The notes under the pieces are model-generated. The model had not been told where the DNA came from, did no database searches, and saw only the letters and a program-made list of their open reading frames with translations. Source: Octopus sinensis (Eukaryota). Taken from it: 64,000 bases of DNA. Numbering within the stretch: the first letter of the stretch is position 1; every line of letters starts with the position of its first letter. The position numbers were made by a program, and so were the translations under genes. The DNA is taken from the NCBI RefSeq assembly GCF_006345805.1, contig NC_043007.1, positions 28,830,001 to 28,894,000 on the forward strand, read 5' to 3'. Positions 3,969 through 64,000 of this stretch are shown here, in pieces.

Positions 3969-4336
3969 TATATATACACACACATTTATACATGTGTGTA
4001 TGTATATACAAATATATATATATGTATATACACATACACATATATATTCATAAACACGCACACATACACATGGTGGGCTTCTTTCAGTTTCCATCTTCCA
4101 AATCCTCTCACTAGTCTATCGTTGGCTCAGGTCTAGAGTAGAAGACATTTGCCCAAGGTGCCATGCAGTGGAACTGAACCCAAGACCACATGTTTAGGAA
4201 GCAAGCTTCTTAACTACACATCTCTCTTCCTTTTTACTCCCTAGCTCTTTAAAATTCTGTCTTGCATCATTCAAGAAAGGAAGATTCTACTTTGTTGGGT
4301 AGGATTTTCTGGATGAGAATTTTAACACTCTCATTT

Positions 4337-4348
4337 AGAGAGAGAGAG

Positions 4349-4384
<36 letters not shown>

Positions 4385-4409
4385 AGAGAGCTAGGAGAGA
4401 GAGAGATAT

Positions 4410-4452
<43 letters not shown>

Positions 4453-4480
4453 AAGAGAGAGAGAGGAGAGAGAGAGAGAG

Positions 4481-4530
<50 letters not shown>

Positions 4531-4682
4531 GAGAGAGAGAGAGAAGAGTAGAGAGAGGGAGGAAGAGAGAGAGAGAGAGAAATAGAGAGGGAAGGGAGAG
4601 AAGAGAGAGAGAGAAAGAGAGAAGAGAGAGATAGAGAGAGAGAGAGAAGAGAGGAATAGAGAGAGAGAGAGAGAGAGAGAGA
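4337..4682. repeat. Imperfect (GA)n homopurine tract
   Basis: About 345 bp of near-pure AG. Other long microsatellites: (AAG/AAC)n 12061-12170, (TAA/TTA)n 25705-25810, (TA)n 29382-29460 and 31158-31239, (GAT/GGT)n 42400-42650, (TAA)n 62586-62654. Confidence 0.97.
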
Positions 4683-5074
4683 ATATATTTTATGGGTCTG
4701 TGGTGACATCAAAGTTACCTTAATTTTAAACAGGTTTCATCAACGTTTATCACAAAAGACAAACAAATACAAGATAAACTATCAGGAAGTTGTTGGAATT
4801 CAGCAGGAACAGGATAACAGGAAGCCCTCTTTCCTTGCCCTTCCCCTCTTGCCCAGTCTTGACACAGAAATAATTATTTTAACAGAAATATAATCACAGA
4901 CATATTGCAATGTTAGGATGTCTGAGTTTCTCAATTTCTCTGCACCTAGCACACACACACACACACGCACACACACACAAACATGCATTCACACACATAT
5001 ATATATACACACATATACATGTATACATACACATAAACATGCACACACACAACACACGTATGCACATACACACG

Positions 5075-6200
5075 TACTCATTCCTGCTGAATTTTACAAT
5101 CACGGTGGAATTCTGCTCCATCTCAAATTGCAAACGTTTTGCAACTATATTGCCAAGAATAATCAGTTCCACAAGAGGAATGGAGATTGTATGATCCGTG
5201 ATGATCACTGTGATATCTCTTTGATTGTAATTGTTGAGAAAATTATTGCCAAGCCATTCCTGAAGAGACTTCCAGACATATTTCTCAACCCAGAAAGTTA
5301 GTGTGGCTTTTATGTCAAAATCAGAACAACTGATTGGTTTTTGAGACTCATCTTTGGGAAAAGGCCAGAGAACAAGCTGAAGATGTCTTCTTGGTTTTCA
5401 TTGATTTACTAAGGCATTCGACAATGTCATGAAGACCTGTAAAAAGTTCTAAAATCTGTTGTCCTCTTGGTTTTGTCAACATTGTCACATCCTTTATGAT
5501 GGAATGTAAAAGAGGTGTTGTCGGAAATGGAATGGTGATTGAACCTTTGACTGTGACAGACTGTGTCAAACAAGGTTATGTCCTTATTCCAATGTTATTA
5601 TTCATCTGCTTCTCATCTCATCTACACTTGATACAACTTTAAAAAAAGAAACAATAAAATACTAAAAAAAAAAGAGAAAAAAACACCAGTTGGTTATAAG
5701 TTGTAATTTTGGACTGGTGGCAATATATTAAACCTTTGATAACTGTACTGAAACAAAATAGAAATGGTTGTGTGAGCTGCTCTTTGTAGATGTCAGGTGT
5801 CTAAAAGTGAAGCTAGGCCACAGGTTTATCTAGCAAAAGCCAAAGCAGAAAGAAAGAGTTTGCCAATGTCTTACAATGTGAGGATAAGGGATGAGAGATG
5901 CTCTGGATTGATAGATAGTGTATCAGAGAGGATGATGATGTGGGAGAGAAGTTTGTATGGATGGATAATGGTAAGCTGGCACTTAGTGATTCTGAAAAGA
6001 AACAGGCATGGAAGTGTTGCCATTAGATTCAATGAACCACAGACTGTTTCTCAGCTGCTTCAAAACACTTTGGTCTCACAATCAGCATGAGAATGTCTGG
6101 CACCCTGCTCTAACCCAGAACTAGATTCTTGCTGAGTAATTCAGAAATCACTGCTTACAGAAATGTGCTAAAGGTGGTAGAGGATTTTACCTTGTTGGGC
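5075..6200 (+). mobile_element. Decayed RTE RT fragments (two families, nested)
   Basis: PAEFY..DISL..PES..DFTKAFD-like and VKQG motifs at 5075-5610; FGLTIS..LKVVEDFTLLGS at 6020-6200; an intervening piece of the main RTE family at 5780-6015. Confidence 0.7.
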
Positions 6201-6342
6201 AGTGTAGGCTGACTTAATAGATCAGTAATAGACAAACGAGTTTAATATAAATCAGTAATTGAGCCACATTCATAAGACACAGAATGATTATATGTCATGG
6301 ATTAACATTAATAAAACACATGTTTAATAATAGAAAACTTAC

Positions 6343-6416
6343 TGTTTAGAAGTTTACTGTCTCCTCTGGGAAGTTCTTTCACAATAGTACCATCATCTTT
6401 ATCAAGGGCCAGCCAG
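6343..6416 (-). CDS. LOXHD1: LOXHD1-like PLAT-repeat gene, exon F (end of intact PLAT module)
   Basis: Acceptor ctctacag, donor gtaagt; 74 nt, phase 2 to phase 1. Encodes (S)WLALDKDDGTIVKELPRGDSKLLN, the PLAT C-terminal WL-x-x-D-x-DDG-x-IV-x-EL motif. Joins exon E in frame as CNSWL. Confidence 0.88.
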
Positions 6417-7699: not shown

Positions 7700-8120
7700 A
7701 AAATCAAAATCAAACTCGATGACTGGCGTCCGTGCAAGTGGGGTGCAAAGAGCACCATACCAGTGTTATCGTTGACAGAGCGGCTAACTGGCTTCCATGC
7801 CAGTGGCACATAAAAGGGCACCATCCAAGTGTGATTGTTACCAGTGTCGCCTTACCGGCACTTGTACTCATGCTAGTAGGGTGCCAAGAGCACCATCCGA
7901 GCATGATTGTTGCCAGAGCAGCCAACTGGCTTCTGTACTGGTGGCACGTAAAAAGCACCCACTACACTCTCAGAGTGGTTGGCGTTAGGAAGGGCATCCA
8001 GCTGTAGAAACTCTGCCAGATCAAGATTGGAGCCTGATGCAACCATCTGGTTCGCCAGGCCTCAGTCAAAATCATTCAACCCATGCTAGAATGGAAAGCG
8101 GACGTTAAACGATGATGAAA
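7700..8120 (+). mobile_element. RTE 3'-UTR-type short elements (representative copy)
   Basis: Shared GTGGTTGGCGTTAGGAAGGGCATCCAGCTGTAGAAAC..CATGGAAAGCGGACGTTAAA(GAT)n. Further copies at about 10.6, 17.8, 30.3 and 41.7 kb (+) and 60.4 kb (-). Confidence 0.85.
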
Positions 8121-10066: not shown

Positions 10067-10224
10067 CTATTGCAGTGGAACAAATAAAGTTTACTGGGAT
10101 CGTTCTTCACTCTAATTTCAACTTTCTCCAAGAACCATCCACTTCCGGGATTACTGGCATCATGTCCAATATGTATTTTCGTTAATTCTTTCAAGTCAAC
10201 AGCTTCAATTAAGAATTCATCCAC
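10067..10224 (-). CDS. LOXHD1: LOXHD1-like PLAT-repeat gene, exon E
   Basis: Acceptor atttcag, donor gtatgt; 158 nt, phase 0 to phase 2. Encodes VDEFLIEAVDLKELTKIHIGHDASNPGSGWFLEKVEIRVKNDPSKLYLFHCN, with canonical PLAT IGHD and GWFLEKV motifs. Confidence 0.92.
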
Positions 10225-12216: not shown

Positions 12217-12371
12217 CTGTCCTCTTTCAAATTTAGTCTGGTTGCTCCTAGATTCTTCCAAGTATCGTTGTCCAGTGTCTCCAAGTTTTCCAAAGATGTT
12301 CACAAATACATTGGCATCGGTTCCTGCTTCAGCTACATCACCTGTATACACCACTACGATGTAGTGAACAA
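12217..12371 (-). CDS. LOXHD1: LOXHD1-like PLAT-repeat gene, exon D
   Basis: Acceptor tatttcag, donor gtatat; 155 nt, phase 1 to phase 0. Encodes (V)VHYIVVVYTGDVAEAGTDANVFVNIFGKLGDTGQRYLEESRSNQTKFERGQ, a canonical PLAT N-terminal half. Absent from the ORF track. Confidence 0.92.
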
Positions 12372-12616: not shown

Positions 12617-12656
<40 letters not shown>

Positions 12657-12658
<2 letters not shown>

Positions 12659-13980
12659 CATCATCATTTAATTTTTGTTGTCCATGCTGGCACGGGTTGG
12701 ATAGTTTGACTGGGCTGGCATGCTGGAAGGCTGTGCCAGGCTCCATTCTGACTTGGCATGATCTTCTACAGCTGCATGCCCTTCCTAACGCCAACCACTC
12801 CAAGAGTGTAATGGGTGTTTTTACATGCCATTGGTACTGGTGCCATTTGTGTGGCACCGGCATCTGCGATGACTGCGAATTTACCTAGGTGACCAAGCCA
12901 GTAGCAGGGGAGGGTGCTCTGAAAGTGTAAATGCAAGAATAAGAATAGCCTGGGCAAAGTTCAGAGAGCTCTTACCTCTGCTAGTGACAAAGGGCCTCTC
13001 GCTCACAGTGAAAGGCAGACTGTATGATGCATGTGTACGAACAGCCATGCTACATGGGCTGTGACTGCTGAGGACATGCGTAGGCTTGCAAGGAATAAAG
13101 CCAGTATGTTCCGATGGATGTGTAATGTCATTGTGCAGACATGACAGAGTGTAAGTACTTTGAGAGAAAACTTGGGCATATGAAGCATCATATGTGGTGA
13201 GAATGGATGAGGACAGCTGTGTGAAAAAGTGCTACACCCTAGCTGTTGAGGGAACATGTGGAAGAGGTAGACCCAGGAAGACCTGGGATGAGGTGGTGAA
13301 GCATGACCTTCGAACATTAGGCCTCACCGAGGCAATGACTAGTGACTAGGATCTTTGGAAATATGCTGTGCTTGAGAAGACCTGGTAAGCCAAGTGAGAC
13401 CATAACCCCGTGGGCAATGCCAGGGGTGTAACCAGCCCACTTATGTGTACCTTTCTTTCATTGGACACTAAACTCTGCTTGCGAAGACCTGTTGAGGCAA
13501 GTGAAATCAAAATCAAATTCGATGACTGGCATCCATGCCAATGAAGCGCTAAGAGCACCATCCGAGCGTGATCGTTACCAAAGCTGCAAACTGGCTTCCA
13601 TGCCGGTAGCATATCAAAAGCACCATTCGAGTGTGAACATTACCAGCGTCGCCTAACTGGCACTTGTGCCAGTGGCACGTGAAAAAACATTCGAGTGAGG
13701 TCGTTGCCAACGTCGCTGGACTGGCTCCTGTGCAGGTGGCACATAAAAAACACCATTTGAGCGTGGCCATTGCCAGTACCGCCTGATTGGCCCTCGTGCC
13801 GGTGGCATGTAAAAGAACCCACTACACTCTCGGAGTGGTTGGTGTTAGGAAGGGCATCCAGCTGTAGAAACACAGTCAGATCAGATTGGAGCCTGGTGCA
13901 GCCATCTGGTTCACCAGTCCTCAATCAAATCATCCAACCCATGCTAGCATGGAAAGCGGACGTTAAACAATGATGATGAT
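12657..13980 (+). mobile_element. RTE 3' end (12883-13980, +) fused head-to-head with an inverted 3' UTR piece (12657-12882, -)
   Basis: LGDQ..GGC SES..VKGRLYDA..LHG..GRGRPRKTWDEVV plus the family 3' UTR; (CAT)n at the left end and (GAT)n at the right end. Confidence 0.85.
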
Positions 13981-14257
13981 GAGATATATATACAACTTAA
14001 TTTGTACTCCTATGCTAAATAACTGACCAATTATATTGTAGAGATAAAAATAGCACAATTTAACTAAAAAAAAAAAAAGCAATGAAAATACCTAATTGGG
14101 AGAGAAGCATTGATAGGTGTTCTCTAGTCTCATATGTAAAGTAGTTGTCTGTGAAGCAACTGATATCTAGTTCAAGTCCCACAACAGAACCCATTTGTTT
14201 TTCTGTCTGAAATTAGGGCTAATATCAATTTACAATGCTAGCAAGTTATTCATCCAC

Positions 14258-17092: not shown

Positions 17093-17483
17093 GTCTGGGG
17101 AGTCATTTTCTTTTTGTGCCTTATAATTTAACTCATTCACTGGTAAAATTTCCACATTCCTTATTTTTATTTTCCTAAAATTTTCGTTGTGCCTTGCAAC
17201 CTTTTCAATAGTCAAGACTATTGAAAAGGTTGCAAGCAAGCTTTTGCCCTTTTGCACGACTTGTGATTTTCATCCATGCTGAGCTTGCCTTGGGACACCT
17301 GTGTTACCCTTTGACAGACATACCGCCCCAGTCAAACTCCGCAACCGACACTGTTCTCAACTATTGAAAAGGTTGCAAGACGCAACGCAAATTGTAGGAA
17401 AATAAAAATAAGAAATAAGTGGAAATTTTACCAGTGGGCATGTTAAATTATAAGGCACAAAAAGAAAATGATTCTTCCCAGAC
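17093..17483. mobile_element. Foldback/MITE-like palindromic element (about 120-bp arms)
   Basis: 17093-17212 is the near-exact reverse complement of 17360-17483. The original loop is only CAAG (17213-16). No TSD or family was recognised. Confidence 0.8.
17237..17359 (-). pseudogene. 28S (LSU) rRNA fragment from the domain V P-loop region, non-functional insertion
   Basis: Minus strand AACAGTGTCGGTTGCGGAGTTTGACTGGGGCGGTATGTCTGTCAAAGGGTAACACAGGTGTCCCAAGGCAAGCTCAG...AAAAGGGCAAAAGCTTG matches the conserved eukaryotic 28S segment. Flanked by the direct repeat ACTATTGAAAAGGTTGCAAG at 17217-36 and 17360-79. Confidence 0.9.
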
Positions 17484-18630
17484 CAAACAAACTAAAATCA
17501 GCCCCTTCCTTAGACTAATGTGTATTTTTTGTAATATCAGTGTGCCGTTATCTTTGAGACACTGACAGAATTTACCATTTCAATTAACTGCAACGATGTG
17601 TTGCACAAGAGTAGGTGCTATGTGTGCACTCCACATATCTACTGATATAAACGTATCAGATGTTTGGATTTTTCAAAGATGAAACAACTTGTTTTGTCTG
17701 GTTCCTCTCTCTTTCCCTCTTGCTCGTAGTTATTTCAGGTAATCCATTGTATCCATTGTAGAGAGCACCATTTGAGTATGGTCAATGCCACCTGATTGGC
17801 TCCCGTGCTGGTGGCACGTAAAAAGCAGCATTCGAGCGTGGTTGATGCCAGTGCTGCCTGACTGGCCCCCATGCCAGTGGCATGTAAAAAGCGCCCACTA
17901 CACTGTCAGAGTGACTGGCATTAGGAAGGGCATCTGGCTGTAGAAATTTTGCCAGATCAGATTGGGACCTGGTGCAGCTTCTTGGCTTGCCAGTCCTTAG
18001 TCAAACTGTCCAACTCATGCCAGCATGGAAAGCGGACATTAAGCAATGATGATGATGATGATATATAAATTACCTAAAGTATATTTTAATATTACTAAGG
18101 TGATAAAGGCAATGAGCTGCAAGGCAGGATGCTTCGTGGCATGTTGTGTCTTTATGTTCTGAGTTCAAATTCAACCAAGGTTGACTTTGTCTTTCATCCT
18201 TTTGGGGTCAATAAAATAAGTACCAGTTGAATACTGGGGTCAACTGAATTGACTTGGCCCCTTTCCCAAAACTGCTGGCCTTGTACCAAAATTTGAAGCC
18301 AAGATTATAATTTTGTGTTTAGTTTTTCATGCAAGTATGAGTTGAATTGTCGATTGTGATGCTTTCAGTTAAATCTTATTTGAAGATACTGCCCTCATAG
18401 ATGTGAAGGGGAAGAACCATGCCTCGCTTAAATTTGGCATAGTTTCTTTGTTGGATATCTTATATTTTATAACATAATAAGTTATAATTTTTATTTCTGT
18501 TCAAATATGATACAATTTTATTATGAAATGTTATTAGCAAACATTGTTATATGTAAGTTTTGGTGGAAAGCTGATGATTATTAAAGGTTTAAGGGGAAAA
18601 AAATAAATAAACAAAAGAGGGGGTAATAAC

Positions 18631-18769
18631 CTGATAAAGGGTTCTTAATTTCAGGTCCAGAGGCAGGTAACTCTTGCACAATTTGTCTCTTTCCTTCATC
18701 CTGTGTTGACCAACAGCAACTAGCCAGAAATTCATAACGTTTTGAGGTCTTACTATTTTCCATTTCAAC
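18631..18769 (-). CDS. LOXHD1: LOXHD1-like PLAT-repeat gene, exon C (divergent PLAT C-half)
   Basis: Acceptor ttttccttcag, weak donor gttatt; 139 nt, phase 0 to phase 1. Encodes VEMENSKTSKRYEFLASCCWSTQDEGKRQIVQELPASGPEIKNPLS. Continues exon B (LEK|VEM) and joins exon D (PLS|VVHY). Confidence 0.8.
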
Positions 18770-20215: not shown

Positions 20216-20280
20216 ATTCAAGAATTTCAGTCTCAAAATAATTATCACCATTGATAATGCAATATTTTAGTGAAGTTAGA

Positions 20281-22182
20281 CATCATCATCATCATCATCG
20301 TCGTTTAACGTCCGTTCTCCATGCTAGCATGGGTTGGACGGTTCGACCGGGGTTCTGGGAAGCCAGAAGGCTGCACCAGGCTCCAGTCTAATTGGCAATG
20401 TTTCTACAGCTGGATGCCCTTCCTAACGCCAACCACTCCGTGAGTGTAGTGGGTGCTTTTTACGTGCCACCTGCACAGGTGCCAGGCGGGGCTGGCAACG
20501 GCCACGGTCAGATTGGTGTATTTTATGTGCCACCGGCACGGAAGCCAGTCGAGGCGGTGCTGGCATCGGCCACGAGTCGGATAGTGCTTTTTACGTACCA
20601 CCAGACCAGGGATCCTGGCTGGTTCAATTCGATTTCGATTTCGCTTGCCCCAACATGTCTTCACAAGCAAAGGGGGTTGGCAAGGGTGCCTGTCGTACGG
20701 TCGCATTGGAGTATTTTACGTGCCACAGCCACGAGTCGGATAGTGCTTTTTACGTACCACCAGACCAGGGATCCTGGCTGGTTCAATTCGATTTCGATTT
20801 CGCTTGCCCCAACATGTCTTCACAAGCAAAGGGGGTTGGCATGGGTGCCTGTCGTACGGTCGCATTGGAGTATTTTACGTGCTACGGCCCCGAGTCGGAT
20901 AGTGCTTTTTACGTACCACCAGGCCAGGGATCCTGGCTGGTTCAATTCGGTTTCGATTTCGCTTGCCCCAACATGTCTTCGCAAGCATGGGGGGTTGGGA
21001 TGGGTGTCTGTCGTCGGATGAGGTTCTATATCGACTTCGCTTGCCTCAACCGGTCTTTGTGTCCAAGGGAGGAAAGGTATTCATAAGTGGGCTGGGCTCA
21101 CTTGTCCTGCCTGGTCTTCTCACGTACAGAATATTTCCAAGGTCTCGGTCTCTGGTCATTTCCTCAGTGAGGCCTAAAGTTCGAAGGTCGTGCTTCACCA
21201 CCTCGTCCCAGGTTTTCCTGGGTCTACCTCTTCCACGGGTTCCCTCAACTGCTAGGGATTGGCACTTTCTCACACACCTATCTTCATCCATTCTCGCCAC
21301 ATGACCATACCAGCGCAATCGTCTCTCTTGCACACCACAACTGATGCTTCTTAGGTACAACATTTCTCTCAAGGTGCTAACGCTCTGTCGAGTATGTACA
21401 CTGACATTACACATCCATCGGAGCATACTGGCTTCATTCCTCACGAGCTTACGCATGTCCTCAGCAGTCACAGCCCATGTTTCGCTGCCATGTAGCATGG
21501 CTGTTCGTACACACGCATCATACAGTCTGCCTTTTACTCTGAGCGAGAGGCCTTTAGTCACCAGCAGAGGTAAGAGCTCCCTAAACTTTGCCCAGGCTAT
21601 TCTTATTCTAGCAGTTACACTTTCAGCGCACCCACCCCCACTACTGACTTGGTCACCTAGATAACGGAAGCTATCAACTACTTCTAGTTTTTCCCCCTGG
21701 AGAGTGACGGAAGTTGTTTTCTGCAGATTTTCGGAGGTTAATGCTCCCGAGCATCTGCCACATACAAAAACTATCTTCCCAGTTAGCCTACCTTTGACAT
21801 TGCTGCACCTCTTATGTGTTCATAGCTTACACTGGGTACATCTTATAGAGTTTCTACCTACACCTTTTCTACAGATCGAGCAGGGCCATCTTCCTGAAGA
21901 TATTTGTGGATTGTCTACCTTTCTACTTATTAGTACTTTGGTTTTAGCTAGGTTGACTCTAAGGCCCCTTGATTCTAAACCCTCCTTCCACACCTGGAAC
22001 TTCTCCTCCAGTTCTGATAGTGACTCAGCAATAAGAGCAAGGTCGTCAGCGTAGAGGAGCTCCCAGGGACAGCCTGTCTTGAATTCCTCCGTAATTGCCT
22101 GGAGTACTATGATAAATAGGAGGGGGCTGAGTACTGAACCCTGGTGGACCCCAACCTCTACTTTGAATTCTTCTGTGTACAT
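20281..22182 (-). mobile_element. RTE-clade LINE, young 5'-truncated copy with 3' UTR and (GAT)n tail
   Basis: RT motifs VGVHQGSVLSPLLF and LLYADDL (ORF 21820-22182); C-terminal ORF 21046-21561; a TGG>TGA stop at about 21820; CpGs are retained. Confidence 0.95.
20571..21010. repeat. 159-bp tandem triplication inside an RTE 3' UTR
   Basis: Units begin at 20571, 20730 and 20889 (CACGAGTCGGATAGTGC..). Confidence 0.92.
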
Positions 22183-23535: not shown

Positions 23536-23783
23536 CTTTTCTAAAGGATAACCAGAGAAAGTGCCAGAGTTATCATGCCAAATTCTGATTTTGTAGAGAG
23601 TTCCAATGTCTGCTGTGGCTATTTCAAATTTGTAAGTTTGTCCTCCTTTGAAACCTATCTTTCTGTTGGACAAAAGTATTTCATTTGACTTCCCTTTCAA
23701 ACCATATACAACAACTGAAATAGTAGAATCAGGCCTTGCTCTTGTGCTCTCACTTGTTGACACCCACAAAAACCAACGTTGTT
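23536..23783 (-). CDS. LOXHD1: LOXHD1-like PLAT-repeat gene, exon B (divergent PLAT N-half)
   Basis: Acceptor ctttatttcag, donor gtactt; 248 nt, phase 1 to phase 0. Encodes QRWFLWVSTSESTRARPDSTISVVVYGLKGKSNEILL...DIGTLYKIRIWHDNSGTFSGYPLEK (overlaps ORF 23497-23769). Confidence 0.85.
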
Positions 23784-31239: not shown

Positions 31240-31830
31240 TAGAACATACTAACAAATATTGCATAAAAAACAGTAAACGACAAGACAAAAACCTAAAGAA
31301 ACATCTAACAAGAGCGAAATTCTCTTCAGAAACTAAAACTGAATTCTTTGCAAAAGATTGCGGAGATGGTTGATGTGGGATCTGCAGCAACCCCACTGAC
31401 AAATACATAGAGGGAGACAAAGAGATGAAATTTAAAAGTGGTTACGTATTTAAAGTAAATGCAGATATGAACTGCAAGACGCAGAACGTTATATACTGCA
31501 TAACCTGCCCCACGTGCAAGGAAGATTACATAGGTGAAACTGGTAATTCTTTGTGCCAGCGAGCCAGGATTCACCGACAACATGTTCAGCAGGAAGAACT
31601 ACGCAAGATACCACTGAGTAAACACCTAGATACATGTGGAGAAGGAAAATTTAAGATCTTTCGCTTCTACAAATGTCCGAAAAACGACACCTCTTTCAGA
31701 AGGAATATGGAAAAATATTTCATAGCTAAGTTCTCCCCCAAATTAAATGGCTGAAAATATCTCTATAATAAGCTGTACCAGATGAAGGACCAAATTTGCT
31801 AAGTAAACTGTATTAAACACACACACACAC
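31240..31830 (+). mobile_element. Penelope-like element 3' fragment (GIY-YIG endonuclease)
   Basis: ORFs 31146-31373 (SKRQDKNLKKHLTRAKF) and 31425-31754 (NVIYCITCPTCKEDYIGETGNSLCQRARIHRQH..PLSKHL). It starts directly after a (TA)n tract. Confidence 0.88.
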
Positions 31831-32160: not shown

Positions 32161-32482
32161 CACATGCTCTCTCTCTCACTTTCTCCTCATCCATCACCCT
32201 CTTGTACTGTCTTATATTCCTCCCCACCACTACAAACTCAATACCACTATAAAATGGTCAGAACTCCTCACACAGGAACTTGGTTTGATTTGAAAACCCC
32301 ACTAGAATGGGGGAAAGCGCTAATACATGATCTAAGTTATATGATGTATAAAAAATGTAATATACAAATAAATATCTGTAAATATAAACTATCCGATTTT
32401 CTGAGTACCTCATTTCTTCTAATATAAAATACCTGTACATCATCTCCAAACCTTCCAATATATATATATATATATATATATA

Positions 32483-33755
32483 GGGTCATCCCATAAATAC
32501 TGCAGTTTTTTCAATTGCATGAACTAAAAGTTGGAGGGGGATGGGATAAACTACCTGCATCAACTTGCTATAAAAGCTGTTAGTAATTTTACCTTGTACT
32601 TATTCTTAGTGCAAGTTTTGAAGAGTGCAGTTCGATTTTAACAGTTATTTTTTCAAAGCTATAATGGAAGTGACAAAGGAACATATTCAGCATATTTTGC
32701 ATTATGAGTTTAATAAAGGCAACAGTGCAACAGAAGGTGCAAGGAGTATTAAAGCCATATACGGGGATTGGACAATAAGCATAAGCCAGTGTCAGTGGTG
32801 GTTCCAGAAATTCTGAGCCAGAAACTACAGCCTAGAAGATGACCCTCATTCAGGAAGATCTGTAGAGGACGTCCTGCATACCCTGGTGAAACAAAATCCC
32901 ATCATAACTGTTGAACTAGCAGAGACGCTTGGATTTGGTCACTCAACCATTCATTGACACCTGTATGCTATCAGAAAAGTCAGCAAATTGGGTCAATGGG
33001 TTCCTCACAAACCTTCTGAGTCTAATTGTGTGCAGATAGTGAATATGTGCTCTTCTTTGCTGCCACATCTCATGAATGAACCTTTTTTGGACCTAATAGT
33101 GACTGGTGACGAGAAATGGGTTCTCTATAAAAATGTCAAGCAGCAAAGACAGTGGGTAGGGGAAGGAGAAACACTGGCACCCCAGGCTAAAGAAGGTCTT
33201 CATCCATGTAAGGTGTTGTTATCTGTTTGGTGGGATATGAAAGGTTTAGTCCACTTTGAACTTTTAAAGCCAGACCAAATGATAACATAGGAGATCTATT
33301 GTGAGCAGCTTGAGTGGCTTAAGTCAATGCTAGAAGAAAAATGACCATCTTTGGTTTCAAGACGAAAGGTGTTCTTCCATTAGGATAATGCTTGGCCACA
33401 TACAGCGAGGATGACATCCCAAAGGCTGGAGCAGTTTGAATGGGAAACGATGCCCCACCCACTATATTCACCAGACATTGAACCCATCTGGTTATCATTT
33501 ATATCGCAGTTTTCAAAATCATTAGGACGGAAAAAATATGAATTCTGTAGATGAGGTCAGAACAGTATGGAAGGAGTATTTTTCATTATGGCCAAGTGAA
33601 TTCTGGAAGAGAGGCCTTGCAAGTCTACCAGATAGATGGAAGAGATTGTAGAAAATGAAGGAGAGTATATTTTAGATTAAAAAAGATCTTTGTTTAACTT
33701 AATTTTGAAAAATAAAAGAAGTATAAAAAAACACATTATTTATGGGATGACCATG
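32483..33755 (+). mobile_element. Near full-length mariner (DD34D) transposon, dead copy 1
   Basis: TIRs GGGTCATCCCATAAATA / TATTTATGGGATGACC; ATG at 32664 (MEVTKEHI); WVPH, GDEKW, DNAWPH and YSPD motifs; multiple stops and frameshifts. Confidence 0.95.
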
Positions 33756-33859
33756 TATATATGTATATGTGTGTGTGTGTGTGTGTGTGTAATGACCTTT
33801 ATAATTTTGAAGAAATTAATTAGACTGTAACGATGAAATAAATTCAATGAAAAACTTAC

Positions 33860-34257
33860 TGTTTTCAGGTTTTTTTTTCACCGTGTTTCCTTCCTCCAAA
33901 ATCTCTTTGATCAAACCATCTCTTTCATCTGCTGCTAACCACATGTTGCATGGAAAAACTTGCTCAAGACTTGTTAAAGTCTAATGAATAACCACTTGGT
34001 CCAAAGTCAATCTAGAGATAAGCTGGAATTATCATGACTAATTATAATTCTATCAACAAGGGCCACTTTCCTCAAAAGCAATATATTGAATAAAGTCTGT
34101 TTTTATCTCGTTTCAAGTTTTACCGTTTTTGGATCCGGTTCTTGCAGCTGCTTGTTTGTATTTGAGTCTTTGTCGAAGATAAACAGAAATACATTGAAAC
34201 CAGTGCCAACATGTCTTCTGTTTGTCTTGTAGTGACAACTGATGGTGAGTGGACAAT
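33860..34257 (-). pseudogene. LOXHD1: Disabled single-exon PLAT module (pseudo-exon A) of the LOXHD1-like gene
   Basis: Acceptor ttttattcttccag and donor gtaagt are intact. The 398 nt (3n-1) read ..VGTGFNVFLFIF..KLETR*..DRIIISHDNSS..D*[-1 shift]LDQVVIH*..EQVFPCNMWLAADERDGLIKEILEE..PEN, with three stops and a frameshift. Confidence 0.82.
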
Positions 34258-35285
34258 CTGGAAGAATAAAAGACATTACCGAGAAACGGAATCAATAGTT
34301 TTGCTTATGAAAGAACATTTGTTGCGAAGAAAGGAGATTGACAAACCTGGAAGTTGGCTTTGTTGTTTCCAATAAACAAGACTTAGAAAAACTATTCCAG
34401 TTCATAAAAGAACAACAAGAATAACAAGCTAATTGTTCGAAAACTATTCCTTTGAGGTCTGAATAACTAAGGTTGGTGGAAACACATCGGTAGGAAGGCT
34501 GGAAATAAGAGATTCATGATGGTTCTCAAGGAAAGAATAACTTGAAGAAGGATAATGAAATAAATGCATCACTGAAAAGAACAGTCGAAAGATAAGTATT
34601 TATTATTCTGACGATATAAAAAGGCTGACATAGTTTCATCTTGTCCCCTTTGTTGGACCCCACCTCCCTTCCCTGTTTCACCCTTCTCAGCCCTACTCAC
34701 TAGGAAGAAATGAAAAGAAGAAGTTGGTCTGTTACATTCATTTTCAGCTATTTTTGACAAACATTGCTTGCTCTCCACCACCCGTCTTATTGTTTACATA
34801 ACAAAGGACACCCCAGCTAACACAAATATGTTAAAGACTCTATTAAATGTGTGTGTGTGTGTGTGCGTAGGCGCATATAGCAGTATACGTTGGATGGCTT
34901 TGTCTTAGTGTGCGTATAAACACATAAACACGCATGCCCCAGCAAGTCTGCACAAAGCTTTTGAATGAAAGAACACACACCTATATGTATGCACCACCCC
35001 ATGCACACCCATACACTTTCTCTCTCTCTCACACACACACATTTACAGTAACCTGGAAATTTCTCAAATCATTCCTTATAAGTTTCCCTTTTCTGATCTT
35101 CCAGAAACATAATATGGAGTAAGAGTTGGGGAGTTGCTCATCTTAGAATAAATAGAATAAAACTCTACAATACATATTGAGCACTTTTTTTATACCTTCT
35201 AATTTTTATAATTACTTGCACCATAATGTAATAAACACATGTGAGTATGCGACTGTATTTATTTCAAACACATCAGGTCAAAAGC

Positions 35286-35342
<57 letters not shown>

Positions 35343-38300
35343 CAAAATTTTCCATGAAGATTGTGTTCCAATTTATTTTCAGTTTAGAAGTAAAGATGAC
35401 GAATAAAAAAGATAACAAATAAAAAAGATAATGAATAAAATGTGTGTTTATCCAGAGTTTCACTCTGACTTGGCTAAACCTATTGATGATACCCTTAATG
35501 AAGGGAGACAAGAGGTGACATTTTGTTGAGAGAATTTGCTGCCCTCAAAGACATCAATTATCACAACCAAAGGTTTATTACATTCAAAGATGAAATTCCT
35601 GCAGTCATGCAAAGCAAGAACTGGTCAAGCCAAGTTTATAGATAGAAGAATACACCACAATGAGATCAAACTTAAAACCATGGGGCATATCTACAGCCAA
35701 TATTACATGCAAAACCAAAACCATTTGTACAATGGTTTTCATGAAGCAACACTTAAAGAGTCCAGTTTATGAATGTAGCAAAACTGATGATACATAAGTT
35801 ATATAAGAAGAGAGAAACTGCACACACAACCAATAGACTGTTTATATAATTCGAGAACAATGTATGAGGGAAAGTGTGTAAGGGATAGGAGAGGGGGTGA
35901 CATCAAGCTTTATAAACAGACACCAGATGGCACCGTAAATGACTATTTGTTATCAATTTAGGATGTTTTTCGTTGGATTAACAGATAAAAAAATAGAAAC
36001 AGTAAAATCTGCAAAATACATTATCAGTGATGCACAGTGCATACATGCACACATCAAACCACACAACAACAACAACAACAATACACACACACACATATTA
36101 CCTTCATCTTTTCTGTCCTCTTTCCACTGCATAAGAGGTATTGTCCACTCAATGCTGACCAATTCTCTTTCACCATTGACCTTTATCCAGGGCAAACACA
36201 GCAACCTAATTAAATCTTATATTACATCTAGCTAAATCATCCTTAAAATGGTGACATGTATGTCTTTTGCGACAAGATAAAAATGCTAAGTATGTGGCCA
36301 ATGGTAGACTTGATGTATCTTAGCCAGAATCAGTTTTTTCTTTGTTATAAAAAAAATCCTTTCAGCTGAGAAAGTTTACATTTATGGAATTAGCTGACCC
36401 TTATTTTGAGAAAGTGAACAAAAGTAGACATAGAGCAATGTCCAGTGTCTAATTCTCTTGATAATGTGTGTTTGAGTGCAAGCATACAGATGCACATACA
36501 CACAAGGACGCAAACGAAGACACACATCCATACATAACAGACACACGTACATAGTCACACAAACCCACACACAGACACAATCAAACATACACACACATTA
36601 ACATGAACACAAACACATGCATACATACACATACACATGCACACACATGCACACAAGCAAACAAACAAAAAGAATGCAGCTTCAATGCTGGACAGAGTCA
36701 ACGACCATTGAAGAGGTTGCAAGAAGCAACGAAAATTTTAGGAAATATAAAGAAGTAAATGAGTGGAAATTGAACAGGTGCGGTGAGTGTGTTAATTAAT
36801 AAGGCATTAAAACAGAATGACTCTCCCCAAACACAATAATATATATATATATAGAAGGAGAGAGAGAGAGAGATCACGAGAGAGGGGGGTGTGCATTTCC
36901 ATGTATATATTGGTATACTTAATAAAAGGACTAGAAAGACAAGGTGATAACCAGATTTCAAATGAAGAACTCAGTTCTTGGTCCATGTAAAAGGTGTGAC
37001 ATAAATATATTTCACACTGTATCCTAACAACATTGCAACTTTTAGAAGTACAAACAGAAACAAACTGTGACTTTGTTAGAGTACATGACTAAAGCTTTTT
37101 TCATGTCAAAAAAGCTGATACAGAGCGAAGGGGACATCTTACAGAGACAAAATTACTTGTTAGAAACAGCAGCTCATACAATATATTCTGCTCTGTTACT
37201 TTTATGTAATGATTGTGTAGTGGTGTTGGTAGAAAAAGAGACAACTTTTATTATAGCCAATAAAGCACCTTCCCTACATCATGGAGAAATGTGACTTCTT
37301 AACTCTAAGAAAGCAGCCTGCCTGGGAAATTGGTTATTTAACCTTATTGTGGAAAGGAGATATTATTATGGTTAAATCATGGGTTTTCTATCTGTGACCA
37401 CAAAAAGAGATTAATTTAACTAGTTTCAGTATTTATTACAGCCTCATCAGAGATTGTAAACTTATTTTCTGCCCACAGAATGAATATTATTTATAATTGA
37501 AAGAAACTCACACAGAACTAAGTTGCCCTACAAAATGTTTTAAAAAATTAATTGAAATACTGCACTGAGGTTAAAACAAAAAAATTTTTTTAAACAAAAT
37601 ATGAAACTTTTAGAATGTGAGACCAGTGTGTAGCCATATTGAGGTTTTCACAAAAACTCAGGCTCATGAGATTTATCGTACACTTTAAATTATTTGACAG
37701 AAATCAGTAGTTTGATGTATTAGGATTTAATATTTTGTTTAGTCTCAAGTCAGTCCAAATCCAGTAGGCCCATAATCAAAGTTGTTCCAACTGTGGCCAT
37801 CCAATCTGTTATTCAGACACAATGTATCTATAACCAGATCATCTAATGTGTCCTTCATTTTGTAAGATGGCAGGGTGTGATTTGATGGAAATTTGACTGC
37901 TATTCCCAGCAAGCTGTATAAAGTATATCTGGTATATATTTCATTGTTATTTAGCTCTAATCAGTCATTCAGCAGAACTATAATATTCCAACCATGACCA
38001 TCTTGCAAAGATTTCCTTATCAATTCACTGTTCAAATGGTATTATTACTTACTAGAACATTGAATATTCAGAACTCAGTAAGAATTCCACATCTAAACTA
38101 TTGGAGAGATGAGATTCTGTTGTGTCTAATTCTAGTTTTGGTTTTGATTGCACACAAAAGATTCACTTTGTATTTTAATATCTCTTTCCTAATCCTCTTC
38201 CTCAATCTGTCTCTCTGTCTCTCCTTTCTCATCTACATCTAAAATCAGGCTCCTTTTATGCCAAAAGAATGATTGAACAACCAGTGGTAGATGTTTAAAT

Positions 38301-52844: not shown

Positions 52845-54107
52845 TTGGGTCATCCCATAAATACTGCAGTTTTTTCAATTGCATGAACTAAAAGTTGGAG
52901 GGGGATGGGATAAACTACCTGCATCAACTTGCTATAAAAGTAGGTAGTAATTTTACCTTGTATTTATTCTTAGTGCAAGTTTTGGAGAGTGCAGTTCGAT
53001 TTTAAGTTATTTTTTTTCAAAGCTATAATGGAAGTGACAAAGGAGCATATTCAGCATATTTTGCATTATGAGTTCAATAAAGGCAACAGTGCAACAGAAG
53101 GTGCAAGGAGTATTAATGTAGTATAACGGGATAGGACAATAAATGGAAGTCGGTGCCAACGGTGGTTCCAGAAATTCTGAGCCAGAAACTACAGCCTAGA
53201 AGATGACCCTCATCATGGAAGACCTGTAGAGCTTGACAAGGACAGCTAGCAAACCCTGGTGAAACAAAATCCCATTGTAACTGTTGAGGAACTAGCAGAG
53301 AAGCTTGGATTTGGTCACTCAACCATTCATTGACACCTGTATGCTATCAGAAAAGTCAGCAAATTGGGTCAATGGGTTCCTCACAAACCTTCTGAGTCTA
53401 ATCATGTGCAGATAGTGAATATGTGCTCTTCTTTGCTGCCACATCTCATGAATGAACCTTTTTTGGACCCAATAGTGACTGGTGACGAGAAATGGGTTCT
53501 CTATAAAAATGTCAAGCAGCAAAGACAGTGGGTAGGGAAAGGAGAAACACTGGCACCCCAGGCTAAAGGAGATCTTCATCCACATAAGGAGTTGTTAACT
53601 GTTTGGTGGGATATGAAAGGTTTAGTCTACTTTGAACTTTTAAAGCCAAACCAAATGATAACAAAGGAGATCTATTGTGAGCCGCTTCATTGCTAGAAGT
53701 AAAACGACCATCTTTGGTTTCATGACGAAAGGTGTTCTTCCATCAGGATAATGCTTGGCCCCATACAGTGAGGATGACATCCCAAAGACTGGAGCAGTTT
53801 GAATGGGAAATGATACCTCACCCACACTATTCACTGGACATTGTCCCATCTGATTATCATTTATATCGCAGTCATCAAAATCATTTGGACGGAAAAAATA
53901 TGAATTCTGTAGATCAGTACTGGAGAAGTATTTTTCATTATGGCCAAGTGAATTTTGGAAGAGGGGCCTTGAAAGTCTATCAGATAGATGGAAGAGTATT
54001 GTAGAAAATGAAGGAGAGTATATTTTCAATTAAAAAAGAATTTTGCTTATCTCTTTTTGAAAAATAAAGAAGTATAAAAAAACTGCATTATTTATGGGAT
54101 GATCCAA
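52845..54107 (+). mobile_element. Full-length mariner (DD34D) transposon, dead copy 2 of the same family
   Basis: TA TSD at 52843-44 and 54108-09; TIRs TTGGGTCATCCCATAAATA / TATTTATGGGATGATCCAA; ATG at 53028; 34 residues between QD and SD. Confidence 0.95.
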
Positions 54108-54151
54108 TATGTTGTGTGTGTGTGTGTGAGAGAGGGAGAGGGAGAGAGAGA

Positions 54152-59292: not shown

Positions 59293-60397
59293 ATAGCATT
59301 ATTATCATCATTACAGTTATCACCATTACTATAACTGTTATTATTATCGTACATTTAAAAGAGGTTTGAATTTATCAATAACATTTTTTCTTTCACTTTT
59401 CTCTTCATTTCACTTGAGTTGTGTAGTTTGTAGAATTGGTATATTATAAACTTTTTCTAACTACGTGTTGCCAGATGATTGCTTAAAGGGACCTGATGAA
59501 CATCAGGGTCCCTAATTTGCTGTCGATGCACATAGGAATGTTCTGACAATGCATTCCCAGTTTAACCAATGCATATTTCTTCACAATTTAGACATTTGAT
59601 GCAGTAAATTGCATTTCTGTTTTGCAATTCATATTTACTTTTGCAAATATTCTTCTGGTTTTTATGTTCCTATATTCACTGGCAAATATGAACTGATCAT
59701 GTACCACATCAATTATCCCTGCAATTAGATACAATGAATGATTCATCATTTTTGTTTTGATCAAACTTTGCCTTTGTCAATAACTGCTTCAAGTTTTATG
59801 GCTGTCTTTTGGAATCGTAGCTCAATCTGTGATTATACCTTTGAATTCATTACTTTAAGCAATGATTCGCTAGTTTGCTTTGGCAATGCAAAAGATATTT
59901 TAGGGACATGGATTGTATATCACTATAAATGGTATGACCTGTTTTCGTTTTCCTCTTTTTTGTTTTTTGGGTTGCCCTAAGTTGTTGTATAGGTATTTCT
60001 ATAACATACTGTATACCATTTTCTATAAGTAGAGATGAGTATTTTTGTTTTAGTAGAAATTCTTTGAGTTTCGTAAGGCATTTGTTTCTAATATTTACAT
60101 CTTCTATAATGGTACAAATTTTTCTAACTAAAATATCTCATTGGAAAAAGCAGGATAAATGCTAACCATGACATCTAAGCCACATACTGATTGGTGAAGA
60201 TATAGTTTGTAAAACCCATCGGAAGGTACTTAAAGCACACATCTAACTATTTCACTATAGTTGTCAATTGTGGAACACAAATGTCACTACATGATCCTGA
60301 TGATTGCATAATACATGAAAGAACTGGTTTATTTCAATACTGTAAATAATAAAATGTGAAAATCAGACTAAGTTGGAATTTCATTGATTAATACATA
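58706..60397 (-). mobile_element. Penelope-like element fragment with inverted terminal (pLTR) repeats
   Basis: Inverted arms at about 58706-59025 and 60125-60397. The minus strand between them encodes a decayed thumb/linker/GIY-YIG region (FLLKQKYSSLLIENGI..SKRQP*NLKQLLTKAKF..CIKCLNCEEICIG*TGNALSE..HRQQIRDPDVHQVPLSNHL). Confidence 0.88.
58777..58818 (-). ncRNA. Minimal hammerhead ribozyme motif in the PLE terminal repeat
   Basis: Minus strand reads ATGATC-CTGATGA-TTGCATAATACAT-GAA-AGTACT-A-GTTTAT. The core is intact, stem III is the palindrome AGTACT, the triplet is CUA, and stems I and II are imperfect. An inverted copy at 60291-60332 is mutated in stem III. Confidence 0.6.
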
Positions 60398-61046
60398 TCA
60401 TCATTATCATCATCATTTAACGTCCGTTTTCCATGCTAGCATGGGTTGGACAGTTCGACTAGGGTCTGGTAAGCTATGGAGGCTGCACCAGGCTCTAGTC
60501 TAATCTGGCAGTGTTTCTACAGCTGGATGCCCTTCCTAACGCCAACCACTCCGTAAGTGTAGTGGGTGTTTTTTACATGCCACTGGGCACAAGGGCCAGA
60601 GCAGGCTGGCAAACGGCCACGATCGGTTGGTGCTTTTATGTGTCACTGACACGGACGCCAGTCAGGTGGCGCTGGCATCTGCCACGTTTGGACGATGCCT
60701 TTTACATGTCACCGGCATGGGTGTCTTAACTACAATTTTCATTTGAATTTTTATTTTGATGTTGATGAACTTGACACAATAGGTCTCCTCAAGCACAGCA
60801 GGCCGTCCTGCAAGCCATGAACTCACTTAATATATATATTAAAGTTTATTTGCCAACATAATGTGGCAGTCCTGAATAAGACTATGTTACTACTTTTTAA
60901 CCCCAGGAAACACCCTTTCCAGCTGTCAGTTCATGCATGCATGCATACATACATACATACATACATACACACACACAACAACCACACACACACACACACA
61001 ACACACACAAAACATACTACATACATAATACATACATACATACATA

Positions 61047-62585: not shown

Positions 62586-62654
<69 letters not shown>

Positions 62655-64000
62655 CATCATCATCATCGTTTAGCGTCTGGTTTCCATGCTAGCATGGGTT
62701 GGACAGTTCAACTGGGGTCTGGGAAGCCAGAAGGCTGCACGAGGCCCAGTCTGATCCGGCAATGTTTTTACGGCTGGATGCCCTTCCTAACGCCAACCAC
62801 TCCGTGAGTGTAGTGGGTGCTTTTTACGTGCCAGACGAGGCTGGCAAACGGCCACGATCGGATGGTGCTTTTTACATGCTACCGGCATGGAGGCCAGTCG
62901 GGGCAGCGCTGGCAACAGCCACTTGGATGCTTCTCTTATGTGCCACCAGCACTGGTATCACAGCTACAATTTCCATTGATGTTGATCGATTTCAATTTTC
63001 ACTTGCCTCAACAGGTCTTCGCAAGTAGAGTTTTGTGTCCCAAGAAGGAAAGGTAGGCATAAGTGGACTGGCTACATCCCAGGTAGAGGCCATGGTTATG
63101 GTCTCACTTGTCCTGCCAGGTCTTCTCACGCACAGCATACTTCCAAAGGTCTCGGTCTCTAGTCATTTCCTCGGTGAGACCTAAAGTTCGAAGGTCGTGC
63201 TTCACCACCTCGTCCCAGGTTTTCCTGGGTCTACCTCTTCCACAGGTTCCCTCAACCACTAGGGTGTGGCACTTTTTCACACAACTGTCTTCATCCATTC
63301 TTACCACATGACCATACCAGCGCAAATGTCTCTCTTGCACACCACAACTGATGCTTCTTAGGTCCAATTTTTCTCTCAAGGTACTTACACTCTGTCGAGT
63401 ATGAACACTGACATTACACATCCATCGGAGCATACTGGCTTCATTTCTTGTGAGCTTATGCATATCCTCAGCAGTCGCGGCCCATGTTTCACTGCCATGT
63501 AGCATGGCTGTTCATACACATGCATCATACAGTCTGCCTTTTACTCTGAGCAAGAGGCCTTTTGTCACCGGCAGAGGTAAGAGCTCTCTGAACTTTGCCC
63601 AGGCTATTCTTAAACTTTCAGCACACCCACCCCCGCTACTGACTTGGTCACCTAGGTAACGGAAGCTATCAACTATTTCTAGTTTTTCTCTCTGGAATGT
63701 GGTGGAAGTTGGTCTCTGCGCATTTTCAGTGTTTATTGCTCCTGAGCATCTGCCACATACAAAAACTATCTTCCTAGTTAGCCTTCCTTTGACAGTGCTG
63801 CACTTCTTATGTGTCCATAGCTTACACTTGGTGCATCTTATAGAGTTTCTACCTACGCCTTTTCTACAGATCGAGCAGGGCCATCTACCTGAAGGCGTTT
63901 GTGATTTGTCTACCTTCCTACTTATTAGGACTTTGGTTTTAGCTAGGTTGACTCTAAGGCCCTTCGATTCTAATCCTTGCTTCCACACCTGAAACTTCTC
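62655..64000 (-). mobile_element. RTE-clade LINE 3' part (same family), running off the window end
   Basis: ORFs 63512-63988 and 63104-63505 are near-identical in protein to the 21-22 kb copy; same 3' UTR and (CAT)n at 62655. Confidence 0.95.

What the first reader, a model, noticed from the sequence alone, without database searches (positions are those of the whole stretch)
33860..34257. A whole PLAT domain fossilised as a dead, phase-symmetric exon with intact splice sites
Seen: the exon aligns end to end with a PLAT domain but has three stops and a net -1 frameshift, while its acceptor and GTAAGT donor are perfect. Both ends are phase 1, and it would join exon B in frame (PEN|KQRW). A dead mariner sits about 100 nt into the following intron. 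Established: vertebrate LOXHD1 is a tandem-PLAT protein required for hair-cell function, and cephalopod statocysts use hair cells. Inference: phase 1-1 modules can be skipped without a frameshift, so this lineage may be shortening its PLAT array by exon death. Alternatively the 5' part of the gene, or the whole copy, is pseudogenised.
Basis: partly seen in the sequence, partly recalled or inferred. Interest (0 to 1): 0.7.

Follow-up and report, generated by a model that had tools for sequence, protein, structure and literature searches.

The report
Dead PLAT exon in octopod LOXHD1
One exon of an octopus-like copy of the hearing gene LOXHD1 once encoded a whole PLAT domain but now carries two stop codons and a one-base deletion, while the next two PLAT domains stay intact; this is an ordinary case of domain loss by exon decay, and whether the gene still works cannot be told from sequence alone.

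Summary
On the minus strand, 34257..33860 is a 398-nt exon-shaped block with a polypyrimidine-AG acceptor and an ACA|GTAAGT donor. It aligns end to end with a PLAT domain: 62 bits against a LOXHD1-derived PLAT model, but only 19.7 bits against Pfam PLAT, below its cut-off of 23.

The homologous reading path is broken by a TAA (34105-34103), a TAG (33983-33981) and a 1-bp deletion in a Trp codon, which leaves TGA at 34009-34007.

New here: the window holds three consecutive LOXHD1 PLAT units, each starting and ending in phase 1.
- Exon A (dead) matches best the unit that corresponds to mammalian PLAT3, and carries its class-specific EQ[TV]F motif.
- Exons B-C correspond to PLAT4.
- Exons D-E-F correspond to PLAT5.
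- Spliced, B to F give 258 open codons.

No PLAT1-2 exons lie in the 29.7 kb upstream, and PLAT4 has lost several near-invariant residues.

So exon A is a real pseudo-exon in its ancestral place. Three readings remain open: it is skipped in frame, the 5' end of the gene has been abandoned, or the whole copy is dying. That needs RNA and comparative data. I lean slightly to 5' erosion. The intact splice sites are not evidence of function. Modest interest: a new example of a known kind.

The parts
34258..34275 (-). 3' splice site of exon A: polypyrimidine tract and AG (tgtcttttattcttccag)
   Evidence: Read directly from the sequence. The AG is at 34259-34258.
33860..34257 (-). Exon A: decayed single-exon PLAT unit, 398 nt (399 minus 1), phase 1 at both ends. 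It matches best the LOXHD1 unit just before the PLAT4-type unit, that is mammalian PLAT3.
   Evidence: tblastn. HMM score 62 bits over positions 5-110 of 112. Pfam PLAT 19.7 bits, below the cut-off of 23. Position-specific comparison and the EQ[TV]F motif.
34103..34105 (-). Premature TAA in the homologous frame (ETR*KQ)
34007..34009 (-). TGA at the frameshift point. Inferred 1-bp loss in a Trp codon (TGG-A became TGA). With the base back, the path would read SLSLDWTLDQVVIH, which fits the PLAT G-x-x-W-x-L motif.
   Evidence: The deletion is inferred from the change of homology frame.
33981..33983 (-). Premature TAG in the shifted homologous frame (VIH*TL)
33854..33859 (-). 5' splice site GTAAGT of exon A. 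The context AACA|gtaagtttt is the same as at the end of exon F.
32482..33753 (+). Dead mariner element in intron A-B, 106 nt from the donor of exon A. A second copy at 52846..54110 is 89% identical.
23536..23783 (-). Exon B: first two thirds of the PLAT4-equivalent unit. It starts in phase 1 (A|AA CAA CGT TGG = KQRW) and ends in phase 0.
18631..18769 (-). Exon C: last third of the PLAT4-equivalent unit plus the linker ELPASGPEIKNPLS. It ends in phase 1.
12217..12371 (-). Exon D: start of the PLAT5-equivalent unit. It starts in phase 1.
10067..10224 (-). Exon E: middle of the PLAT5-equivalent unit
6343..6416 (-). Exon F: end of the PLAT5-equivalent unit. It ends in phase 1 at AACA|gtaagt.

Best explanation
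Exon A is a genuine relic and can no longer code. It was once the single-exon PLAT unit of a LOXHD1 orthologue that corresponds to mammalian PLAT3, and it still lies in its ancestral place upstream of the PLAT4 (exons B-C) and PLAT5 (exons D-E-F) units.

Shown:
- It carries two nonsense codons and a 1-bp deletion.
- Its protein-level similarity to its own class is far below that of any intact member.
- The 258 codons of B to F are open.
- Every unit is phase 1-1.

Inferred:
- Any productive mRNA from this locus must leave exon A out.
- My preferred scenario is that the 5' end of the gene (the PLAT1-3 region) is no longer part of the translated product. Either transcription or translation now starts downstream of exon A, or the upstream part has been lost.
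- In that case exon A is invisible to selection and drifts, with its splice sites intact by chance.

How sure I am: about 0.9 that exon A is a real dead exon of LOXHD1; about 0.35-0.4 for the 5'-erosion scenario specifically. The confidence value given for this explanation (0.4) is for the whole statement, including the 5'-erosion scenario.
For: - Homology and collinearity of the three pieces.
- Lesions.
- In ten LOXHD1 proteins from choanoflagellate to mammal, all named as LOXHD1 or PLAT proteins by their sources, B-C matches one domain class best (127 bits against 81 or less elsewhere) and D-E-F matches the next class (170 against 141 or less).
- Exon A's best normalised score is for the class just before these (z -0.85). 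Its best single hit is that domain in carp loxhd1b. It has the motif [EQK]Q[TV]F, seen in 7 of 10 members of that class and in none of the 75 domains of the other classes.
- Exon A scores 63 bits against its class, whose leave-one-out mean is 132 and minimum 82. B-C scores 127 against 159, and D-E-F 170 against 162.
- Open frame of B to F: P about 8e-7 for random sequence. All three lesions falling in A: conditional P 0.04.
- For 5' erosion: no PLAT remnant on either strand in 34258-64000, although the other introns are 2-10 kb. PLAT4 has lost near-invariant residues: AGTDA became ARPDS, GW became GY, and CxRWL became SCCWS.
- The splice sites are intact although including the exon would introduce a stop.
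Against: - There are no transcript data, no orthologous cephalopod sequence and no reads. Two protein searches with exon A returned no close relative of it, cephalopod or other.
- A single intron longer than 30 kb upstream of exon A is quite possible in a cephalopod. The missing PLAT1-2 exons are therefore weak evidence.
- Exon B begins in phase 1, so a downstream start needs an unseen first exon that ends in phase 1.
- The assignment of exon A to the PLAT3 class rests on relative scores and one motif. Absolute scores for three classes are tied at 62-64 bits.
Confidence: 0.4

Rival explanations
1. In-frame skipping in a full-length, working gene. PLAT1-2 exons lie beyond the window. The spliceosome joins the last PLAT2 exon (phase 1) to exon B, and the protein simply lacks PLAT3.
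For: All units are phase 1-1, and A|B would read in frame. A mouse Loxhd1 nonsense allele yields an ORF-preserving transcript that lacks the PLAT10 exons (PMC8051682). The downstream exons are open and PLAT5 is well conserved.
Against: Exon A keeps a strong acceptor and a consensus donor, so by default it would be included and would bring in a stop. Selection for skipping would be expected to weaken those sites. No upstream exon lies within 29.7 kb.
Confidence: 0.3
2. The whole locus is a dying copy, either a unitary pseudogene or a redundant paralogue. Exon A merely took the first disabling hits.
For: Exon A is dead. PLAT4 has lost several near-invariant residues and scores at the low end of its class. 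No upstream exons were found. Teleosts have two LOXHD1 copies (carp loxhd1b), so paralogues do occur.
Against: 258 consecutive codons are open, with canonical splice sites at all ten junctions. PLAT5 scores above its class mean. If the lesion rate were equal across exons, about 6 lesions would be expected in B to F and none are seen. The conditional P that all three fall in A is 0.04.
Confidence: 0.2
3. Assembly or sequencing error: the exon is intact in the animal.
For: The frameshift is a 1-bp loss in a GG dinucleotide, which is a plausible long-read error. Reads could not be checked.
Against: Two of the three lesions are substitutions. None of the 774 nt of neighbouring exons has a lesion. 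Apart from the stops, the exon has also lost conserved residues (GTDA became GTGF) and scores 2.6 SD below intact members of its class. Base-call errors cannot explain that.
Confidence: 0.05
4. Poison exon: the dead exon is kept with good splice sites because regulated inclusion sends the mRNA to nonsense-mediated decay and so tunes LOXHD1 dosage.
For: It carries stop codons and has strong splice sites.
Against: No conservation data are available. The survival of the splice sites is explained by chance. Amino-acid-level decay is what neutral drift predicts.
Confidence: 0.05

Closest known systems
LOXHD1 (lipoxygenase homology domain-containing protein 1; DFNB77), the tandem-PLAT protein of vertebrate hair cells
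   Same: Consecutive PLAT units with short linkers. The window's units B-C and D-E-F match, in order, the fourth and fifth PLAT of mink LOXHD1 (XP_058995688.1) and the equivalent domains in sea urchin, lamprey, carp, a rotifer relative, a schistosome and a choanoflagellate. The linker ELPAxGPxIxxPL is conserved.
   Different: The PLAT3-equivalent unit is dead here. PLAT4 has lost several near-invariant residues. Only three units are visible, so the length of the array and the integrity of the gene are unknown.
Nonsense-associated skipping of the PLAT10 exons in Loxhd1 T1308X mice (Trouillet et al. 2021, PMC8051682)
   Same: Removing a whole PLAT unit keeps the reading frame. A stop-bearing PLAT unit can be left out of the mRNA.
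   Different: That is a laboratory allele with the transcript in hand. Here the lesions are in a reference genome and no transcript has been seen. The unit concerned is PLAT3-like, not PLAT10, and it is a single exon rather than five.
Pseudo-exons (decayed exons) inside modular repeat genes: loss of one repeat unit by exon decay. This comparison is from general knowledge and was not tested here.
   Same: A symmetric-phase exon homologous to a coding unit in orthologues carries disabling lesions and is flanked by intact exons.
   Different: Nothing distinctive apart from the gene and the lineage. Exclusion from the mRNA is not shown.

Membership tests
LOXHD1 orthologue (the gene as a whole) | PLAT/LH2 domains above the Pfam threshold | tested here: met
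   B-C scores 48.2 bits and D-E-F 73.9 bits against PF01477, cut-off 23.
LOXHD1 orthologue (the gene as a whole) | Tandem PLAT units in the conserved positional order of LOXHD1 | tested here: met
   B-C is best against the anchor class (127 bits) and D-E-F against the next class (170 bits) in ten LOXHD1 proteins.
LOXHD1 orthologue (the gene as a whole) | Full array of about 15 PLAT repeats in one open reading frame | not testable with these tools
   Only three units lie in the window. None is found upstream (34258-64000) or downstream (1-6342).
LOXHD1 orthologue (the gene as a whole) | Expression and function in mechanosensory hair cells | not testable with these tools
   No expression data. 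No paper in the library links LOXHD1 to cephalopods.
PLAT domain (exon A itself) | Reaches the Pfam PLAT gathering score | tested here: not met
   19.7 bits against a cut-off of 23, with X at the stops and the Trp restored. A first version without the Trp gave no hit. The family-specific HMM gives 62 bits end to end. So exon A is a degraded PLAT, not an intact one.
Pseudo-exon (decayed exon of an otherwise open gene) | Homologous to a coding unit of orthologues, in the syntenic position | tested here: met
   Best normalised match and the class-specific motif point to the unit that precedes the PLAT4 type. Absolute scores are tied among three classes, so support is moderate.
Pseudo-exon (decayed exon of an otherwise open gene) | Disabling lesions in the homologous frame while neighbouring exons are open | tested here: met
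   TAA, TAG and a 1-bp deletion in A. B to F give 258 open codons.
Pseudo-exon (decayed exon of an otherwise open gene) | Absent from the mature mRNA | not testable with these tools
   No transcript data could be reached. Exact-sequence look-ups of window ORFs found nothing.
Processed (retrotransposed) pseudogene fragment | Homology runs across unit boundaries without splice signals; poly(A) tail and target-site duplication | tested here: not met
   Homology stops at a canonical AG and at GTAAGT, in the same phase and position as the boundaries of units B-C and D-E-F. The A9 run at 33878-33870 lies inside the exon and codes KKK.
Recent intragenic duplicate of a neighbouring PLAT unit | Close similarity to another unit of the window | tested here: not met
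   Apart from the adjacent mariner, nothing in 33000-36000, exon A included, has a nucleotide match elsewhere in the window. The protein alignment to B-C and D-E-F shows only generic PLAT similarity.

The most novel reading that the evidence does not exclude
An octopod LOXHD1 that works without PLAT3, or without the whole PLAT1-3 block. This would be a natural deletion experiment showing which PLAT repeats are dispensable for hair-cell mechanotransduction. A variant of this reading: the dead exon is retained as a regulated poison exon.
Probability: 0.15. Interest if true: 0.5.

Novelty: new member of a known kind. Interest (0 to 1): 0.25.

Why it matters
LOXHD1 is needed to keep the TMC1 mechanotransduction channel at stereocilia tips in mammals (PMC8051682, PMC11387651). 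The individual roles of its 15 PLAT repeats are largely unknown.

If the octopod gene is expressed and functional without PLAT3, or without its N-terminal block, that says which repeats are dispensable. It also shows repeat arrays shrinking by decay of phase-symmetric exons.

If instead the locus is decaying, it is one more lineage-specific pseudogene or paralogue loss. That matters mainly for genome annotation: gene predictors may wrongly include exon A, or may truncate the model.

One by-product is useful. The positional identity of individual LOXHD1 PLAT repeats is recognisable from choanoflagellate to mammal, so single repeats can be homologised across animals.

Tried and rejected
- **Pfam on the first read-through.** I joined the two frames without the Trp and got no hit. 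With the Trp restored the match is sub-threshold.
- **Word-index search with exon A.** No relative found. The same tool returned only LOXHD1 fragments of 360 aa or less for the intact units. Its silence on cephalopod LOXHD1 is therefore not informative.
- **Exhaustive representative search with the read-through.** Rerun with the 40-aa C-terminal piece, it gave full-length LOXHD1 proteins but no close orthologue; best identity was about 50-60%.
- **Exact look-ups of 17 window ORFs, to find other assemblies or transcripts of the same species.** None is in the collection. I therefore could not check the lesions in independent data.
- **PDB.** No LOXHD1 chain matched by sequence. Only PLAT domains of polycystin-1, Rab6IP1 and lipoxygenases matched.
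- **Internal intron rescuing the exon.** 33 GT..AG pairs would give a stop-free, in-frame product. All of them delete the domain core, and so many arise by chance that the idea is uninformative.
- **A-to-I editing as a rescue.** Rejected on reasoning. Editing could turn TAG or TAA into Trp codons, but it cannot mend the frameshift, and Trp is not the expected residue at those positions.
- **Retrocopy origin and recent duplication.** Both rejected.
- **Decayed PLAT1-2 exons upstream, or the next unit downstream.** I searched with generic and class-specific HMMs at E up to 100 and found only noise.
- **Literature.** Nothing on LOXHD1 in octopus or cephalopods.

Full report
**1. What is at the coordinates**

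The feature lies on the minus strand.
- From 34257 down to 33860 there is a 398-nt block.
- It is preceded by tgtcttttattcttccag, with the AG at 34259-34258.
- It is followed by gtaagt at 33859-33854.
- Reading from the third base gives CPLTISCHYKTNRRHVGTGFNVFLFIFDKDSNTNKQLQEPDPKTVKLETR*KQTLFNILLLRKVALVDRIIISHDNSSLSLD.
- After a -1 shift it continues (W)TLDQVVIH*TLTSLEQVFPCNMWLAADERDGLIKEILEEGNTVKKKPEN, with one base left over.

**2. Is the PLAT homology more than chance?**

Yes.
- LOXHD1-type proteins were fetched using the intact neighbouring exons as query. By tblastn they hit 34210-34016 (E 9e-6) and 34004-33873 (E 1.5e-7).
- Against a PLAT HMM built from those proteins, the three stop-free pieces rank 4th, 8th and 9th of 3,335 six-frame segments. 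They cover HMM positions 5-29, 48-71 and 89-110 in order.
- The joined read-through scores 62.1 bits over positions 5-110 of 112.
- Pfam's general PLAT model matches positions 9-109 of 117, but at only 19.7 bits, below its cut-off of 23. The two neighbouring units score 48.2 and 73.9.
- Solved PLAT domains of Rab6IP1 and polycystin-1 also match.

The exon is a whole PLAT domain, and a degraded one.

**3. The lesions**

Along the homologous path there are three events:
- a TAA at 34105-34103;
- a TAG at 33983-33981;
- a frame change between them.

The frame change is explained by the loss of one G from a TGG-A. With it restored, the sequence reads HDNSSLSLDWTLDQVVIH, which is the PLAT 'HDNSG..GW.L..V' motif. 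As it stands, the sequence reads TGA at 34009-34007.

A random 133-codon stretch of this window would carry about 7 stops. The two other frames of the exon carry 6-7 each. The relic is therefore far from randomised.

**4. The gene around it**

Five more exons lie downstream on the same strand, all with canonical sites:

| Exon | Coordinates | Length (nt) |
|---|---|---|
| B | 23783..23536 | 248 |
| C | 18769..18631 | 139 |
| D | 12371..12217 | 155 |
| E | 10224..10067 | 158 |
| F | 6416..6343 | 74 |

- B+C and D+E+F are each 387 nt. Each pair or triple encodes one PLAT unit plus its linker.
- Each unit begins with two bases that complete a codon and ends with one extra base. Every unit is therefore phase 1-1, like exon A.
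- Exon A's last A plus the AA at the start of B gives K, so PEN|KQRW is in frame.
- Exons A and F even end with the same AACA|gtaagtttt.
- Spliced, B to F give 258 codons with no stop, P about 8e-7 for random sequence.
- The introns are 10.1, 4.8, 6.3, 2.0 and 3.7 kb long and are full of transposon debris.

**5. Which PLAT is exon A?**

An exhaustive search with the last 40 residues of exon A returned full-length multi-PLAT proteins. Their sources name them LOXHD1 or PLAT-domain proteins. They come from sea urchin, lamprey, carp, mink, Seison, a schistosome and a choanoflagellate.

I cut ten of them into domains and built one HMM per position.

| Window unit | Best class, score | Next best elsewhere | Leave-one-out range of intact class members |
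|---|---|---|---|
| B-C | anchor class, 127 bits | 81 or less | mean 159, minimum 120 |
| D-E-F | next class, 170 bits | 141 or less | mean 162 |
| Exon A | class just before the anchor, 63 bits | two other classes at 62-64 | mean 132, minimum 82 |

- In mink LOXHD1, B-C and D-E-F correspond to the fourth and fifth PLAT.
- Exon A is too eroded to give a clear absolute winner.
- Its score normalised for each model's generosity is highest for the class just before the anchor.
- Its best single hit anywhere is that domain of carp loxhd1b.
- It carries EQVF. The motif [EQK]Q[TV]F occurs in 7 of 10 members of that class and in none of the 75 domains of the other classes.

I conclude, with moderate confidence, that exon A is the PLAT3-equivalent unit in its ancestral position.
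- It is not a retrocopy, because the homology ends exactly at splice signals in the unit phase.
- It is not a recent duplicate, because it has no nucleotide match elsewhere in the window and only generic protein similarity to the other units.

**6. How degraded is it?**

Exon A's 63 bits fall below every intact member of its class. B-C is at the low end of its class, and D-E-F is slightly above its class mean (table above).

Exon A has therefore lost much amino-acid signal beyond the three lesions, for example GTDA became GTGF. That argues against sequencing error and for a period of relaxed constraint.

B-C is open but has lost residues that are nearly invariant in its class:
- AGTDA became ARPDS;
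- GW became GY;
- CxRWL..DEDDG became SCCWSTQDEGK.

**7. What is missing**

If exon A is PLAT3, exons for PLAT1-2 should lie upstream. Neither tblastn with 35 long LOXHD1 proteins nor generic or class-specific HMMs find any PLAT trace in 34258-64000 on either strand. The window has no assembly gap. Either the next intron is longer than 29.7 kb or the 5' part is gone. Nothing convincing lies in 1-6342 either.

**8. Interpretation**

Shown:
- a real, dead, phase-symmetric PLAT exon of a LOXHD1 orthologue;
- two open units following it.

Inferred:
- any productive mRNA must omit it.

The intact splice sites are not evidence of function. About eight critical bases surviving in a relic of modest divergence is expected. 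If upstream exons were spliced through here, a strong exon carrying a stop would be harmful, so its persistence fits a state in which selection does not see it.

Together with the absent upstream exons and the erosion gradient (A dead, B-C worn, D-F conserved), I lean to erosion or abandonment of the 5' end (about 0.35-0.4). The other readings:
- in-frame skipping, about 0.3. The mouse T1308X allele shows that whole-PLAT skipping keeps the ORF (PMC8051682).
- a dying whole copy, about 0.2. Against it, all three lesions fall in A, conditional P 0.04.
- assembly error, about 0.05.
- a poison exon, about 0.05.

**9. Organism**

No direct identification was possible. The only named close relative of a window sequence is an Octopus vulgaris hypothetical protein, 80% identical to a retrotransposon ORF. 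An octopod origin is therefore likely but not proven. No paper in the library connects LOXHD1 with cephalopods.

**10. Verdict**

This is an ordinary kind of event, decay of one module of a repeat gene, in a gene of some interest. The question that would make it interesting is whether a shortened LOXHD1 is expressed and functional. That needs RNA and comparative data, which these tools could not reach.

Noticed in passing
window 17142-17505 (-): A fragment of eukaryotic 28S rRNA (Rfam LSU_rRNA_eukarya, model positions 2418-2819, 83.7 bits) sits inside intron C-D of the LOXHD1-like gene. It may be an rRNA-derived pseudogene or debris carried by a transposon.
   Followed up: no
window 23783-23536 and 18769-18631 (-): The PLAT4-equivalent unit (exons B-C) is open but lacks residues that are nearly invariant in the same unit of ten other LOXHD1 proteins. 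AGTDA became ARPDS, GW became GY, and CxRWL..DEDDG became SCCWSTQDEGK. Its linker is well conserved.
   Followed up: partly
window 34258-64000: There is no PLAT-like coding remnant on either strand in the 29.7 kb upstream of exon A, although two or more further PLAT units are expected there and the other introns are 2-10 kb.
   Followed up: yes
window 32482-33753 (+) and 52846-54110 (+): Two mariner copies, 89% identical, with terminal inverted repeats GGGTCATCCCATAAATA. Both transposase frames are broken by many stops.
   Followed up: yes
window 31425-31754 (+): An intact 109-aa ORF with a GIY-YIG nuclease domain (28 bits) lies in intron A-B. It may be the endonuclease of a Penelope-like retroelement.
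   Followed up: no
window 21046-22182 (-) and 63099-64000 (-): Two copies of a non-LTR retrotransposon tail, 89% identical, with an RVT_1 match in the copy at 21046-22182 and a PHD-finger ORF in the copy at 63099-64000. The closest named protein is an Octopus vulgaris hypothetical protein.
   Followed up: partly
window 7722-8118, 12621-13990, 17787-18106, 20242-20855, 60389-60743, 62642-63025: A dispersed repeat family of about 300-400 bp, 74-84% identical between copies, with a local tandem duplication at 20569-21014 (96%). No tRNA-like head was found by ARAGORN.
   Followed up: no
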